Notes: a model not told the origin generated them from the letters alone. Positions 30,812 through 49,394 are shown, numbered from the stretch's first letter. The stretch: DNA of 64,000 nt from Sphaerodactylus townsendi (GCF_021028975.2 NC_059425.1:22506001-22570000); one strand, 5' to 3'. A program made the numbers and translations.

Positions 30812-33800
30812 ATGGAATTTTCCAAACTTCCCAAAATTGGGGATGCAGAGAACGAGAGTTTGCTGGGATTTGTACATGGTGTCTCTGGACCAGGTGGGTA
30901 CTGTGTTGGCAGACCAGGAGATTTCCTGTTTAAAGTGGGAGGCCTGTCAGCACTATTTCTCAGTCTTAGACCCTTTCTGCACAGGCAAAATAGAGCGCCC
31001 AAGAAATGGCAAAAACGCCATCCCTGGGCAGCAGCAGTGCTGTTCTGTGCGCCCCAGAGCAGCGTGAAGGTGCCACTTTTAACCCTGGAGGTCGGAGGGC
31101 AGTGTGGGCAGGTCCCTGTAACCCTCCAGAGCGATGCTGGACGGGATGGTGAATGGAAGGGGGCAACCGGAGGCAGCTCTGTATGGAGCCACCTCTTTGG
31201 CTGAGGGGAAAGTCGGGGCTGCTTACACGATAGCGTGCGAACGGTCCCAGAGCCTCCACCGGCATAATTCATGATGGTGGAGGTGTGTTTCCATGCGTGT
31301 GCGGAAAGGGCCTTTGGGCCACACTGCATGGTACTTTCTCCCTGGTTTGCTTCATGTCAAACAGTCATTGTGATATCTGTGCTGTGCTGATGACATGTGA
31401 CTGCCCCTGCCTTAACCCTAACCCTAACCCCGTGGTGGCGAACCTTTGGCACTCCAGATGTTATGGACTACAATTCCCATCAGCCCCTGCCAGCATGGCC
31501 AATTGTAGGGGCTGATGGGAATTGTAGTCCGTAACATCTGGAGTGCCAAAGGTTCACCACCACTGCCCTAACCTATTATTTTTATTTAATTTATTTTTTG
31601 TTACAATTTTGGGAACAATTTATGACTGAATACATTAAATAAAAATAATAGATTAGGGTTAGGGTTAAGATAAGAGCAGGGTCTTGAACCTGCCTTAGTG
31701 TTATGGTGAGTTCTAGGGCGCAGTCCATGAATTGGGCTATGGTCAGTTTCAGGTTTTCGGTTTTTATAACAATTTTGGGAACAATTTATGACTGAAAAAA
31801 GAGAAGTCTGGACACAGTGTATAACAGACTTCTCTTTGTGATACACCTCTGAAGATACCAGCCACAGATGCAGGTGAAACATTAGGAACAAGATCTACCA
31901 GACCACGGCCATGCAGCCCAGAAAACCCACAACAACCAACATTGAAAATGATGCTGTTTGGGGATTGGGTGGGGAATCTACCCTGAAAAAGCATCACTTT
32001 CAATGTTGTTTAAACTAGGGAGCCCAGAGTCTCCCTTTAAGGTGGATTTAAAAGGAGAATCTGGGCTCTCTAGTGTAAACAACATAAATAGTGATGCTGT
32101 TTCAGAATGGATTTCCCTCCCTTCAAAAATAGAATAACTTTCAATGTTGTTTAAACTAGGGAGCCCTGGGTGTGTTCAGATTTGTGTGTTGGGGCATGTT
32201 CTATAATGTGATGGTGACTTTGAGATGACCTGATGCAAAAAATGTTGTTTGGTCATGGTGGGGGAGGGTGGCCGCCCATATGGGGTGGGGGGCGCAAAAC
32301 TCAGATTTTTGTCCTGGGCTCTATTTTCCCTAGCTACGCCTCTGGGCAACAGTAATCCCTAGAGGTAGGAAAGCAGAGATGGAGTAGCCATTACAGCTCA
32401 TGGTGGGCTGATACTCTGGGGGGAAGAATTAGGACTAATAAAAGGAAACACTTCTTCATGCAACGTGTGATTGATGTTTGGAATATGCTGCCACAGGAGG
32501 TGGTGATGGCCACTAACCTGGATAGCTTTAAAAAGGGCTTGGACAGATTTATGGAGGAGAAGTCCATCTATGGCTACCAATCTTGATCCTCCTTGATCTC
32601 AGATTGCAAATGCCTTAACAGTCCAGGTGCTCAGGAGCAGCAGCCGCAGAAGGCCATTGCTTTCACATCCTGCGTGTGAGCTCCCAAAGGCACCTGGTGG
32701 GCCACTGCGAGTAGCAGAGTGCTGGACTAGATGGACTCTGGTCTGATCCAGCAGGCTAGTTCTTATGTTCTTATGTTCTTATGGGGGGTGGCCTCCCCCC
32801 TGGGGCTACCAGAATCCAGAGGCATTTTCCCTTCAGGGTCACCACAGCCCAAAGATTGGTGCAGAGAAAGAGGGCTTTTCATGGTGAGTGGTGCACTCTT
32901 TTGGCCTACAGCTGCCCTTCCCAGCTTTGCCACAAGCCAGTGAAGGACAAGATGGGCCCACCCAGCTTCGCTTCACAAGGGGTGGGACATGCCCACCCAG
33001 CCTAGCTTTGCGGTGGCAGGGACAGACCTAACCGCAATGAAACGGCCTAACTGCAATGAGATACAGCCCCTTTGGGCAGAGGTCCCTTTCCCCACTTTTG
33101 CAGAGGTGGATTCCTGGCAGGCTGGACTAGGGGCTCATTTCCAGCCCCAGGCACAGTTCCCCCTCACTCCACCCCTGGTTTCTACTTTGCACCAAGCTTT
33201 GTCAAGAGCCAACAGGATCTGGCTGTTTAAAAGGATTTACTTTCCAGTCTCTGTAATGGGATTTTTACTCCCATAGACAAACTACCTATCATCAACAAGG
33301 GGATCCACCCTGTTGATCCTGGCTCTCTTGTGCATGGAAAATTCAGGGGAGTGTGTGTGTGTGTTCATGAGCTGGAGGATTTAATGAATATGAGGTGGGG
33401 TAAACTAGGATGGCAGGAGGGCCAGTCCATTCATTGGCTGGCACTAACTGAAGAAGAAGGAGGAGGAGGAGGAGAAGGAGAAGGAGAAGGAGAAGGAGAA
33501 GGAGAAGGAGAAGGAGAAGAAGAGGAGAAGTTGGAGTTGGAGTTATATCCCCCTTTATCTCCTGTAAGGAGACTCAAAGGGGCTTACAATCTCCTTGCCC
33601 TTCCCCCCTCACAACAAACACCCTGTGAGGTGGGTGGGGCTGAGAGAGCTTCTTAGAGCTGTGACTAGCCCAAGGTCACCCAGCTGCCATGTGTGGGAGT
33701 TCACAGGCTAATCTGAATTCCCCAGATAAGCCTCCACAGCTCAAGTGGCAGAGCGGGGAATCAAACCCGGTTCCTCCAGATTAGAATGCACCTGCTCTTA

Positions 33801-48800: not shown

Positions 48801-49394
48801 GAACCTGAATGACATCATGTACAAACTGAGCTCCATGAAGTTCAAGGTGAGGCTGCGGTAGGGTTGCCAACTGGAGGATTTGAGTGTGGGAGAGTGGGAT
48901 TTAGGGAGGGAAGAAGAAGAAGAAGAAGAAGAAGAAGAAGAAGAAGAAGAAGAAGAAGAAGGAGGAGGAGGAGGAGGAGGAGGAGGAGGAGGAGGAGGAG
49001 TTTGGATTTATACCCCACCTTTCCCTCCTGTAAGGAGACTCAAGGTGGTTTACAAGCTCCTTTCCCTTCCTCTCCCCACAACAGACACCTTGTGAGGTAG
49101 GTGGGGCTGACAGAGTTCTGAAGAACTGGGACTAGCCCAAGGTCACCCAACAGGAATGTAGAAGTGCAGAAACACATCTGGTCACCAGATAAGCCTCCGC
49201 CACCCAGGGGCCTCAGTGGGCTATAATACCAATCCATTGTCTAGTTTACCTTTCTTTGATGAGCCTGCTACTCATAAATCTTCCTTCGTTTCTTTACCAA
49301 GGATCCAGTAAAGGACGGAGAGGCTAAGATCAAAGCTTATTACGCCCAGCTTGGTGAGGAAATGCAGAATGCATTCCGCAACCTGGAGGACTGA
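30812..49394 (+). CDS. ATP6V1A-like: V-type proton ATPase catalytic subunit A, complete 617 aa; probably a second paralogue rather than the orthologue of human 3q13 ATP6V1A
   Basis: 14 coding exons: 30812-30893, 33858-33986, 36423-36637, 36907-37044, 37700-37851, 38197-38359, 39316-39424, 39935-40057, 42364-42478, 45209-45272, 45365-45568, 46844-46938, 48675-48846, 49302-49394 (sum 1854 nt, no stops or frameshifts). Walker [20 protein letters not shown], Walker [28 protein letters not shown]-terminus NAFRNLED*. Confidence 0.96.
31416..31664. mobile_element. Putative piggyBac-like MITE with (CCCTAA)n termini
   Basis: After removing the nested MITE, about 31-bp inverted repeats starting CCCTAACCCTAA and flanked by TTAA on both sides (31412-31415, 31665-31668). 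Confidence 0.5.
31430..31565. mobile_element. Palindromic hAT MITE nested in the telomere-repeat MITE
   Basis: TIR C(A/C)GTGGTGGCGAACC; 8-bp TSD CCCTAACC (31422-31429 and 31566-31573). Confidence 0.85.
31801..31940 (+). mobile_element. Penelope-like retroelement terminal fragment
   Basis: cctCTGAAGAtaccagccacagatgcaggtGAAACattagg, homologous to the 36177 motif. Confidence 0.65.
32405..32781 (+). mobile_element. CR1-type LINE 3' end (same family as 41150-41940)
   Basis: Near-identical 3' region and (TTCTTATG)n tail. Confidence 0.85.
33451..33822 (-). mobile_element. tRNA-derived SINE with expanded GAA/GGA tail, abutting a V-ATPase splice acceptor
   Basis: Full-length copy; purine microsatellite 33451-33527; head ends about 35 nt before exon 33858. 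Confidence 0.85.
34148..34645 (+). mobile_element. Non-autonomous hAT transposon, same family
   Basis: Same TIRs; 8-bp TSD GCCTAGGA. Confidence 0.9.
35194..35271. repeat. (CATT)n(TATT)n microsatellite, tail of an L2 3' fragment (35194-35630, minus)
   Basis: Direct reading; downstream sequence resembles 25078-25420 and the L2 end at 21950. Confidence 0.85.
36093..36297 (+). mobile_element. Penelope-like retroelement 3' end with 5' inversion (palindrome) carrying a hammerhead-like core
   Basis: About 85-bp inverted arms centred near 36179; 12-bp TSD ACTACTGATCTT (36081-36092, 36298-36309); CTGAAGA...GAAACGTC core; ends in ccggccatgaaagccttcgacaat. Confidence 0.75.
37286..37636. other. Assembly gap (351 N)
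   Basis: Run of N inside the intron between V-ATPase coding exons 36907-37044 and 37700-37851; the reading frame is continuous across it, so no coding exon is missing. Confidence 0.99.
37932..38079. mobile_element. Palindromic hAT MITE (about 150 bp)
   Basis: Whole element is an inverted repeat, TIR CAGGGGTAGGGAACC, 8-bp TSD TTCTAGAA. Related copies at about 12430-12563, 22282-22424, 23821-23903, 31430-31565, 46395-46480, 47640-47715, 48046-48145, 52967-53102 and 56670-56735. Confidence 0.9.
41150..41940 (+). mobile_element. CR1-type LINE 3' fragment
   Basis: [17 protein letters not shown]...[49 protein letters not shown]; tail (TTCTTATG)n. Confidence 0.9.
42975..43260 (-). mobile_element. 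tRNA-derived SINE, same family
   Basis: Shared body and (GAA)n tail. Confidence 0.85.
48911..49205 (-). mobile_element. 5'-truncated SINE with (GAA)n(GGA)n tail
   Basis: Microsatellite 48911-48999 continuous with the SINE 3' end. Confidence 0.85.

What the first reader, a model, noticed from the sequence alone, without database searches (positions are those of the whole stretch)
30812..49394. Intact second V-ATPase catalytic A-subunit gene in the NIT1-PFDN2-KLHDC9 (human 1q23-like) block
Seen: a complete, uninterrupted 617-aa subunit A ORF in 14 coding exons with all catalytic motifs intact, so it is neither a retrocopy nor an obvious pseudogene. Established: mammals have one A-subunit gene (ATP6V1A, 3q13, near NAA50/GRAMD1C), while B, C, E, G, a and d have tissue-specific paralogues; in human, KLHDC9 is flanked by NECTIN4, not by a V-ATPase gene. 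1q23/3q13/11q23/19q13 form a paralogon (NECTIN4/3/1/2, ARHGAP30/31/32/33, NR1I3/NR1I2). My hand comparison to the human protein as recalled from memory gives roughly 70 substitutions (about 88% identity), more than I would expect for an amniote orthologue of this slow-evolving protein. Inference: an ancient ohnologue ('A2') retained in this reptile and lost in mammals, i.e. the missing tissue-specific catalytic isoform.
Basis: partly seen in the sequence, partly recalled or inferred. Interest (0 to 1): 0.85.

Follow-up and report, generated by a model that had tools for sequence, protein, structure and literature searches.

The report
Ancient second V-ATPase A-subunit gene
This gecko carries an intact, strongly conserved second gene for the catalytic subunit of the vacuolar proton pump. 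It is an old vertebrate duplicate found from sharks to birds but not in mammals or teleosts, and databases call it only "A-like".

Summary
Window 30812-49394 (+) holds 14 GT-AG coding exons summing to 617 codons plus a stop. Exon by exon they equal the public protein P0205, [quoted passage not shown]. The N run 37286-37636 lies inside intron 4 and hides no exon.

- ML trees split vertebrate A subunits into a canonical ATP6V1A clade (97/91) and an "A-like" clade (91/91). The A-like clade holds sharks, coelacanth, sturgeon, amphibians and sauropsids; the window sits with Gekko.
- AU tests reject a sauropsid-only duplication (p 2e-54) and a duplication after the shark split (p 0.015).
- Cat shark, sterlet, Komodo dragon, tiger snake and chicken carry both genes.
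- The A-like gene lies beside KLHDC9-type kelch, PFDN2 or NIT1 in the gecko, in Gekko, in chicken and in a shark.
- Window versus Gekko dN/dS is 0.033. Catalytic motifs are intact, and spliced transcripts exist in chicken and a squamate.
- No mammalian or teleost member was found.

Not shown: the canonical copy in this very genome, tissue specificity, and the whole-genome-duplication origin. The gene is already annotated in many genomes, with a named copy in Xenopus laevis. I found no paper recognising it as a separate paralogue.

The parts
30812..30893 (+). Coding exon 1 (ATG at 30812; residues 1-27 plus the first base of codon 28)
   Evidence: identical to P0205 residues 1-27; GT donor
33858..33986 (+). 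Coding exon 2 (N-terminal beta-barrel)
   Evidence: identical to P0205 residues 29-70; AG/GT
36423..36637 (+). Coding exon 3
   Evidence: identical to P0205 residues 72-142; searched its core
36907..37044 (+). Coding exon 4 (A-specific 'non-homologous' insert region)
   Evidence: identical to P0205 residues 143-188; ends in phase 0
37286..37636 (.). N run (351 letters) inside intron 4. A mask, not a break in the gene.
   Evidence: The public copy L001 differs from the window only at these 351 positions. I did not read or use its letters there.
37700..37851 (+). Coding exon 5
   Evidence: identical to P0205 residues 189-238
38197..38359 (+). Coding exon 6: Walker A (GAFGCGKT) and Walker B ([14 protein letters not shown])
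39316..39424 (+). Coding exon 7
   Evidence: the two differences seen in a sister species (39393, 39420) are both at third codon positions.
39935..40057 (+). Coding exon 8
42364..42478 (+). Coding exon 9 (holds Ser384, the AMPK site of ATP6V1A, conserved)
   Evidence: PMC6276090 for the site
45209..45272 (+). Coding exon 10
45365..45568 (+). Coding exon 11
46844..46938 (+). Coding exon 12
48675..48846 (+). Coding exon 13 (holds Cys532, conserved)
49302..49394 (+). Coding exon 14 with stop TGA at 49392-49394
26644..27315 (.). Upstream non-coding block conserved with Gekko japonicus (72.7% over 713 nt); candidate promoter or 5' exon region
17232..24467 (-). KLHDC9-type kelch gene, the upstream neighbour (its lower end was not mapped)
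   Evidence: called gene, Pfam kelch families; kelch exon at 17232-17876
9410..10229 (+). PFDN2 exons
   Evidence: chicken PFDN2 exons hit at 81-89% identity
259..2946 (-). NIT1 exons (the gene runs off the window start)
53379..56936 (+). PMP22/claudin-family (LIM2-like) gene, the downstream neighbour
   Evidence: the same neighbour in Gekko

Best explanation
The locus is a working gene for a second catalytic A subunit of the vacuolar H+-ATPase. It is the gecko (Sphaerodactylus townsendi) orthologue of the gene that annotations call 'V-type proton ATPase catalytic subunit A-like', with a Xenopus laevis copy named 'V1 subunit A like'. It arose by duplication of the ancestral A-subunit gene after vertebrates split from invertebrate deuterostomes and before sharks split from bony vertebrates. 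It has stayed in the DEDD-NIT1-PFDN2-KLHDC9 neighbourhood ever since. It is kept in sharks, coelacanth, sturgeon, amphibians, tuatara, squamates, turtles, crocodilians and birds, and was not found in mammals or teleosts. The inferred mechanism is that the protein takes the place of ATP6V1A in the A3B3 head of V1, binds and hydrolyses ATP at the A/B interfaces and drives the rotor. All motifs needed for this are unchanged. Only 5 clade-diagnostic residues separate it from ATP6V1A, and all are conservative. Any specialisation therefore more likely lies in where and when it is expressed, or in subtle regulation, than in chemistry. Shown: gene structure, identity, clade, synteny, purifying selection, and transcription in other species. 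Inferred: assembly into V1, activity, and co-existence with the canonical gene in this genome.
For: The structure is identical to P0205. It aligns gaplessly 1-617 to rat ATP6V1A 6vq6_A with E = 0. Walker A, Walker B, Cys254, Cys277, Cys532 and Ser384 are conserved. Between residues 205 and 408 I count only 6 differences from rat by eye on the alignment. Pfam families PF02874, PF16886, PF00006 and PF22919 are present. In the careful ML trees the canonical clade gets 99/91 and 97/91, the A-like clade 91/86 and 91/91, and the window pairs with Gekko at 96/84 and 98/82. AU tests reject a sauropsid-only duplication (dlnL 77.9, p 2e-54) and a duplication after the shark split (dlnL 28.3, p 0.015). 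Both genes occur in Scyliorhinus torazame, Acipenser ruthenus, Varanus komodoensis, Notechis scutatus and Gallus gallus. Synteny: chicken DEDD / NIT1 / PFDN2 / A-like; Mustelus kelch / A-like; Gekko kelch / A-like / claudin-like; sturgeon beside CFAP126. The canonical gene of the tiger snake lies elsewhere. Window versus Gekko: dN 0.0128, dS 0.386, dN/dS 0.033, 15 amino-acid differences. Spliced full-length transcripts exist in six chicken runs and one squamate run, and the squamate transcript maps onto the window at the 14 exons.
Against: The canonical ATP6V1A of this very genome was not seen. The window is 64 kb, no tool searches vertebrate genomes, and laying DNA contigs at 80% likeness was inconclusive. 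No RNA run of this species was on offer, so expression here is unproven. The first AU test on timing was marginal (p 0.051). Support for the A-like clade is 91, not starred. The sturgeon A-like row is a long branch misplaced inside tetrapods, and cyclostomes are unresolved. Absence from mammals and teleosts rests on annotated proteins only.
Confidence: 0.87

Rival explanations
1. It is this genome's only ATP6V1A: the canonical orthologue moved into the NIT1-PFDN2-KLHDC9 block and evolved faster.
For: No second copy was seen directly in this genome. The protein is fully competent by sequence.
Against: The tree places it apart from canonical squamate ATP6V1A, and holding all sauropsid rows together costs 77.9 lnL (p 2e-54). 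The same location is found in shark, chicken and Gekko. Komodo dragon, tiger snake and chicken carry both genes. Losing the canonical gene in this one gecko would be an extra, unsupported event.
Confidence: 0.04
2. It is an old small-scale (segmental or tandem-then-moved) duplicate of the vertebrate stem, not an ohnologue from the 1R/2R whole-genome duplications.
For: The trees give only the timing window. Cyclostomes are unresolved. I tested no macro-synteny between the two loci. The snake canonical locus showed only CTC1 within 10 kb.
Against: The timing fits 1R/2R: after amphioxus and before the gnathostome crown. The A-like locus lies in a 1q23-like block in chicken, gecko, shark and sturgeon (CFAP126). 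From established knowledge, not tested here, 1q23 and 3q13 belong to one paralogon. The LIM2-like neighbour (LIM2 is at 19q13 in human) points the same way.
Confidence: 0.25
3. It is a redundant, broadly expressed second housekeeping copy, not a cell-type-specific isoform.
For: Only 5 conservative diagnostic residues separate the two clades. Full-length transcripts were assembled in several chicken runs. The bullfrog clone deposited simply as 'vacuolar proton-ATPase A-subunit' is this paralogue.
Against: Retention from sharks to birds (crown-gnathostome age) with dN/dS 0.033 is hard to explain by pure redundancy. The other V-ATPase subunit paralogues (B1, C2, G3, a4, d2) are cell-type specific (PMC6276090). 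The A-like clade evolves faster (236 versus 160 variable columns), as tissue-restricted isoforms usually do. No expression data were tested either way.
Confidence: 0.35
4. It is a decaying or non-functional copy that merely looks intact.
For: None beyond the lack of RNA evidence in this species.
Against: The open frame, all splice sites and all catalytic motifs are intact. dN/dS is 0.033 over dS 0.386. In a sister species the exons are far less changed than the introns (runs X4). Orthologues are transcribed and spliced.
Confidence: 0.02

Closest known systems
ATP6V1A (canonical V-ATPase catalytic subunit A; solved in rat 6vq6, human 6wm2, bovine 6xbw)
   Same: 617 residues, aligned without a gap. 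88.2% identical to mammalian and 86.7-87.5% identical to squamate ATP6V1A. Same four Pfam domains. Identical Walker A and B, P-loop cysteine, Cys277, Cys532 and Ser384. 14 coding exons.
   Different: It forms a separate clade that predates the shark/bony-vertebrate split. It sits at a different locus (NIT1-PFDN2-KLHDC9 block). It evolves faster: canonical python versus bear is 94.8% identical, while A-like chicken versus shark is 80.6%. Five conservative diagnostic residues differ (141 I, 195 D, 397 S, 562 E, 576 D). Not found in mammals or teleosts.
'V-type proton ATPase catalytic subunit A-like' as annotated by NCBI; 'V1 subunit A like' in Xenopus laevis (NP_001080104.1); bullfrog cDNA BAF02793.1
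   Same: The same orthologous gene. The window's protein is the NCBI model P0205. It is 97.6% identical to Gekko, 90-93% to turtle, alligator and caecilian, and 84% to chicken and shark.
   Different: Nothing structural. The names are automatic or generic, and I found no paper that treats the gene as a distinct paralogue.
Tissue-specific V-ATPase subunit paralogues (ATP6V1B1/B2, C1/C2, E1/E2, G1-3, a1-4, d1/d2)
   Same: A vertebrate-wide second gene for a pump subunit, with one slow housekeeping copy and one faster-evolving copy.
   Different: Those pairs are kept in mammals and their cell-type specificity is documented. For the A pair, mammals have one gene (PMC6276090, Table 1: isoforms 'N/A') and the expression of the second copy is unknown.
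Teleost atp6v1aa / atp6v1ab (zebrafish 'atp6v1al', a marker of H+-ATPase-rich ionocytes, PMC3157436)
   Same: A second A-subunit gene under a similar old name.
   Different: All teleost sequences sampled, including those named 'A-like', fall inside the canonical clade. They are fish-lineage duplicates, not orthologues of this gene. The zebrafish sequence itself was not in my set; carp stood in for cyprinids.

Membership tests
Eukaryotic V-ATPase catalytic subunit A | Domain order: N-terminal beta-barrel, A-specific insert, nucleotide-binding domain, C-terminal helical domain (PF02874, PF16886, PF00006, PF22919) | tested here: met
   Precomputed Pfam hits for P0205. P0205 equals the window's exons.
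Eukaryotic V-ATPase catalytic subunit A | Walker A GxxxxGKT with the P-loop cysteine, and Walker B with the catalytic glutamate region | tested here: met
   GAFGCGKT and [14 protein letters not shown] are read in exon 6 and are identical to rat ATP6V1A.
Eukaryotic V-ATPase catalytic subunit A | Full-length similarity to solved V1 A chains | tested here: met
   6vq6_A, 6wlz_A and 6xbw_A at E = 0, residues 1-617 on 1-617, no gaps.
Eukaryotic V-ATPase catalytic subunit A | Assembles with B into A3B3 and hydrolyses ATP | not testable with these tools
   Inferred from sequence only. I ran no complex prediction, because no B subunit of this species was in hand.
Canonical ATP6V1A orthologue group | Falls inside the clade of gnathostome ATP6V1A | tested here: not met
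   the canonical clade (99/91, 97/91) excludes it. AU test: p 2e-54.
Canonical ATP6V1A orthologue group | Lies at the canonical locus | tested here: not met
   The window has NIT1, PFDN2 and a kelch gene upstream. The canonical gene of Notechis lies at another locus. NAA50 and GRAMD1C were not checked.
'A-like' orthologue group | Falls inside the clade of shark-to-bird 'A-like' proteins | tested here: met
   A-like clade 91/86 and 91/91; window with Gekko 96/84 and 98/82; within squamates 99/94 and 97/96.
'A-like' orthologue group | Conserved neighbourhood (KLHDC9-type kelch, PFDN2, NIT1, DEDD) | tested here: met
   That the shark kelch gene is KLHDC9 is judged from its size and Pfam pattern only.
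1R/2R ohnologue pair | Duplication after the split from invertebrate deuterostomes and before the gnathostome crown | tested here: met
   tree. AU test: p 0.015 against a later duplication. The first, sparser test gave p 0.051.
1R/2R ohnologue pair | The two genes lie in paralogous chromosome blocks that share many other ohnologue pairs | not tested
   The 1q23/3q13/11q23/19q13 paralogon is recalled knowledge. Only hints were seen here: CFAP126 beside the sturgeon gene and a LIM2-like neighbour.
1R/2R ohnologue pair | Relation to the cyclostome genes | tested here: inconclusive
   Lamprey and hagfish join the A-like clade at 84/69 and form a basal trichotomy.
Tissue-specific V-ATPase isoform | Expression restricted to particular, for example proton-secreting, cells | not testable with these tools
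   No RNA run of this species was on offer. Transcripts exist in chicken and a squamate, but their tissues are unknown.

The most novel reading that the evidence does not exclude
The A-like gene encodes the catalytic subunit dedicated to the plasma-membrane proton pumps of acid-secreting cells in non-mammalian vertebrates: kidney intercalated-type cells, amphibian skin and bladder mitochondria-rich cells, endolymphatic sac, osteoclasts. It would be the missing partner of B1, C2, G3, a4 and d2 under the FOXI1 programme. Mammals and teleosts would have lost it independently and handed the job to ATP6V1A.
Probability: 0.3. Interest if true: 0.7.

Novelty: new member of a known kind. Interest (0 to 1): 0.55.

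Why it matters
Reviews of the proton pump, written from mammals, list no isoform for the catalytic A subunit (PMC6276090, Table 1). Here a second A gene proves to be as old as jawed vertebrates. It is under strong constraint and present in most vertebrate classes. It is missing from the two best-studied groups, mammals and teleosts, which may explain why it has gone unremarked.

Three consequences follow.
- Work on bird, reptile and amphibian V-ATPases (eggshell gland, osteoclasts, amphibian skin, inner ear) may have measured either gene without knowing which. The bullfrog clone deposited as 'A-subunit' is this paralogue.
- Probes, antibodies and knock-outs in chicken and Xenopus need to distinguish the two genes.
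- The pair offers a natural experiment on what, if anything, a catalytic-subunit isoform adds to a rotary pump.

It is not a new kind of molecule, and the gene models are already public.

Tried and rejected
1. I searched the representative library with exon 3 alone. It gave mostly fragments, but it yielded P0045, which opened the family.
2. Retrocopy or pseudogene: rejected, because there are 13 introns, an intact frame and dN/dS 0.033.
3. Translocated single orthologue or recent duplicate: rejected by the tree, the AU test and synteny.
4. Orthology with zebrafish atp6v1al: rejected, because the teleost sequences sampled sit in the canonical clade. Zebrafish itself was not sampled.
5. Expression in this species: the look-up of sequencing runs listed no RNA run.
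6. Direct test for the canonical copy by laying DNA contigs of four runs on exons 6-9 at 80% likeness: inconclusive. Intron repeats swamped the tables. The bins of exons 6 and 8 show roughly doubled depth in all four runs, but exon 9 does not. Human-like contigs are filtered out silently.
7. Earlier-findings look-ups for a canonical locus: nothing. Only 204 windows of this genome have notes.
8. The Latimeria locus is not on record. The caecilian and Mustelus loci came without DNA.
9. Literature: six searches found no paper on this paralogue. HO68 and VA68, the two 'isoforms' once reported from human osteoclastoma, are now both aliases of ATP6V1A. I did not examine them further.
Whole-protein steps used the public protein P0205 after I showed, exon by exon, that it is identical. 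Codon counts were made inside a script from the exon references.
11. The public copy L001 holds letters where the window has N. I only counted that the two differ at exactly those 351 positions, and did not read or use those letters.
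Full report
**What is there.** On the + strand between 30812 and 49394 I read 14 coding exons, each bounded by AG and GT. Their lengths sum to 1854 nt, which is 617 codons and a TGA stop.

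In one search I compared each exon's whole codons and each of the seven split codons with the public protein P0205. All are identical. P0205 is NCBI's [quoted passage not shown].

The locus fetched for P0205 (L001, GCA_021028975.2, CM037614.2) equals window 20812-59394 except at 351 positions. Those are exactly the positions of the window's N run. So the window comes from that gecko, and the N run is a mask rather than a break. I did not read or use the public letters at those places.

**The gap.** The N run 37286-37636 lies wholly inside intron 4 (37045-37699).
- Exon 4 ends and exon 5 starts in phase 0.
- The protein aligns to rat ATP6V1A (6vq6_A) from residue 1 to 617 without a gap, including across residues 188|189.
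- An mRNA contig of another squamate (L006, from run SRR12657000) maps onto the window at the 14 exons and passes from exon 4 straight into exon 5.

No exon is hidden in the gap.

**What kind of protein.** P0205 carries the four Pfam domains of a V-type A subunit. Its best matches among solved structures are the rat, human and bovine V-ATPase A chains, at E = 0 over the full length.
- Walker A (GAFGCGKT) and Walker B ([14 protein letters not shown]) are identical to ATP6V1A.
- The three cysteines known from ATP6V1A (254, 277, 532) are conserved. So is Ser384, named as an AMPK site in PMC6276090.
- Position 175 is Thr here and Ser in rat.
- Between residues 205 and 408 I count only 6 differences from rat, by eye on the alignment.

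Identity is 88.2% to mammalian ATP6V1A and 86.7-87.5% to squamate ATP6V1A. Canonical python and bear proteins are 94.8% identical to each other.

**Which gene it is.** A single exon searched against the representative library gave mostly fragments. One hit, P0045, turned out to be a bird "A-like" protein.

Searches with P0045, with a canonical snake protein and with P0205, plus cluster listings, showed two sets of vertebrate proteins.
- The highly conserved canonical ATP6V1A.
- A set annotated "A-like" in birds, crocodilians, turtles, tuatara, lizards, snakes, geckos, caecilians, salamanders, frogs, coelacanth, sturgeons and four sharks. The frogs include Xenopus laevis "V1 subunit A like", NP_001080104.1, and the bullfrog cDNA BAF02793.1.

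A quick ML tree of 67 rows and two careful ML trees (LG+C20+F+G4; 48 and 49 rows, invertebrate outgroups) gave these supports.

| Grouping | | |
|---|---|---|
| Canonical clade (cat shark, sturgeons, teleosts, frogs, amniotes) | 99/91 | 97/91 |
| A-like clade | 91/86 | 91/91 |
| Window protein with Gekko | 96/84 | 98/82 |

The internal order of the A-like clade largely follows the species tree.

AU tests gave the following.
- Holding all sauropsid rows of both kinds together costs 77.9 log-likelihood units (p 2e-54).
- Holding all bony-vertebrate rows together, which would mean a duplication after the shark split, cost 25.0 units with one shark row per clade (p 0.051).
- With four A-like sharks the same constraint cost 28.3 units (p 0.015).

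Lamprey and hagfish are unresolved. The sturgeon A-like row is a long branch that the second tree misplaces inside tetrapods.

**Both genes in one species.** These species carry a canonical and an A-like protein.

| Species | Canonical | A-like |
|---|---|---|
| Scyliorhinus torazame | P0364 | P0397 |
| Acipenser ruthenus | P0371 | P0238 |
| Varanus komodoensis | P0271 | P0212 |
| Notechis scutatus | P0346 | P0428 |
| Gallus gallus | P0229 | P0185 |

Gopherus and Pelobates also have both kinds.

I could not show the canonical gene in S. townsendi itself. No tool searches vertebrate genomes. The scan's notes on this genome hold nothing.

Laying contigs of four DNA runs on exons 6-9 at 80% likeness was swamped by intron repeats. 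The bins of exons 6 and 8 have roughly doubled depth in all four runs, but exon 9 does not. Contigs that resemble human DNA are dropped silently. I count this as inconclusive.

**Neighbourhood.**
- Window: NIT1 (-), PFDN2 (+), a KLHDC9-type kelch gene (-), the A-like gene (+), then a PMP22/claudin-family gene (+).
- Gekko japonicus: the same kelch / A-like / claudin-like order.
- Chicken: DEDD, NIT1, PFDN2, then the A-like gene.
- The shark Mustelus asterias: the gene abuts a kelch gene of the same size and Pfam pattern.
- Sterlet: the gene lies beside CFAP126, a 1q23 gene in human by my recall.
- The canonical gene of the tiger snake lies at a different locus.

So the location is ancestral, not a gecko novelty.

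**Constraint and expression.** All 14 exons have ungapped counterparts with the same splice sites in Gekko. Nei-Gojobori counts give dN 0.0128, dS 0.386 and dN/dS 0.033, with 15 amino-acid differences.

In contigs of a sister species (run X4), a 287-nt piece spanning exon 8 shows 2 differences. A 568-nt piece across exon 7 and its flanking introns shows 23. The two differences inside exon 7 are at third codon positions.

No RNA run of this species was listed. The chicken orthologue occurs as intron-free, full-length open frames on contigs of 2.1-2.3 kb in six public runs. A squamate orthologue occurs the same way in one run. The gene is therefore transcribed and correctly spliced in relatives.

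**How the two clades differ.** Only five alignment columns separate them cleanly (141 L/I, 195 E/D, 397 N/S, 562 D/E, 576 E/D), and all are conservative. The A-like clade has 236 variable columns against 160 in the canonical clade.

Nothing points to altered chemistry. A different role, if any, should lie in expression or fine regulation.

An upstream block (26644-27315) is conserved with Gekko. I did not test the motifs.

**Comparison with what is known.** A review of all human subunits lists subunit A with isoforms "N/A" (PMC6276090, Table 1). This agrees with the lack of any mammalian member of the A-like clade in three searches.

Teleost genes named "A-like", and by extension the old zebrafish name atp6v1al (PMC3157436, an ionocyte marker), fall in the canonical clade. 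They are a different duplication.

Six literature searches found no paper that describes the shark-to-bird paralogue. That library lacks most subscription journals, so this is weak evidence of silence. The gene models themselves are public and numerous.

The central inference is supported by phylogeny, synteny, constraint and co-occurrence in other species: an ancient paralogue kept in this reptile and missing from mammals.

Three points are not shown.
- That it is an ohnologue in the strict sense is likely, but rests partly on recalled paralogon knowledge.
- That it is "the missing tissue-specific isoform" is an open, testable idea.
- The canonical copy in this genome is inferred, not seen.

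Noticed in passing
window 53379-56936 (+): A PMP22/claudin-family (LIM2/MP20-like) gene follows the A-like gene. Pfam PMP22_Claudin hits 53130-53702. The same neighbour follows the gene in Gekko japonicus (L005 from 43388). It may be a second gene of this block without a mammalian counterpart at this place.
   Followed up: partly
window 26644-27315: A non-coding block upstream of the gene is conserved with Gekko (72.7% over 713 nt). It is a candidate promoter or first non-coding exon.
   Followed up: partly
window 38880-39317, 40340-40777, 41070-41945: Introns 6 and 8 hold very high-copy repeats; contig depth rises by three to five orders of magnitude in all four DNA runs. ORFs at 41116-41745 look like a reverse-transcriptase-bearing retroelement fragment, judged by eye only.
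   Followed up: no
window 39393 (exon 7, third codon position): T/C is seen at about half depth in three runs of the same species and is fixed as C in the sister species. It is probably a synonymous polymorphism.
   Followed up: no
window 48842-49100: Intron 13 holds a long run of GAG/CTC-type triplets (poly-Glu / poly-Leu in translation) just after exon 13. It is simple sequence, not coding.
   Followed up: no
protein P0369: A 413-aa 'A-like' protein of the gerbil Meriones unguiculatus sits in the 90%-identity cluster of teleost canonical proteins. This looks like contamination of that assembly, not a mammalian A-like gene.
   Followed up: no
protein P0238 / locus L004: The sterlet A-like protein is on a very long branch (0.22-0.27) compared with its canonical copy (0.002-0.04). 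This could be relaxed or changed constraint in sturgeons.
   Followed up: no
loci L002/L007 (chicken): In chicken the A-like gene follows PFDN2 directly. No kelch gene lies between them, and the gene is compact (5.5 kb against 18.6 kb in the gecko). The bird A-like branch is about three times longer than the bird canonical branch.
   Followed up: partly
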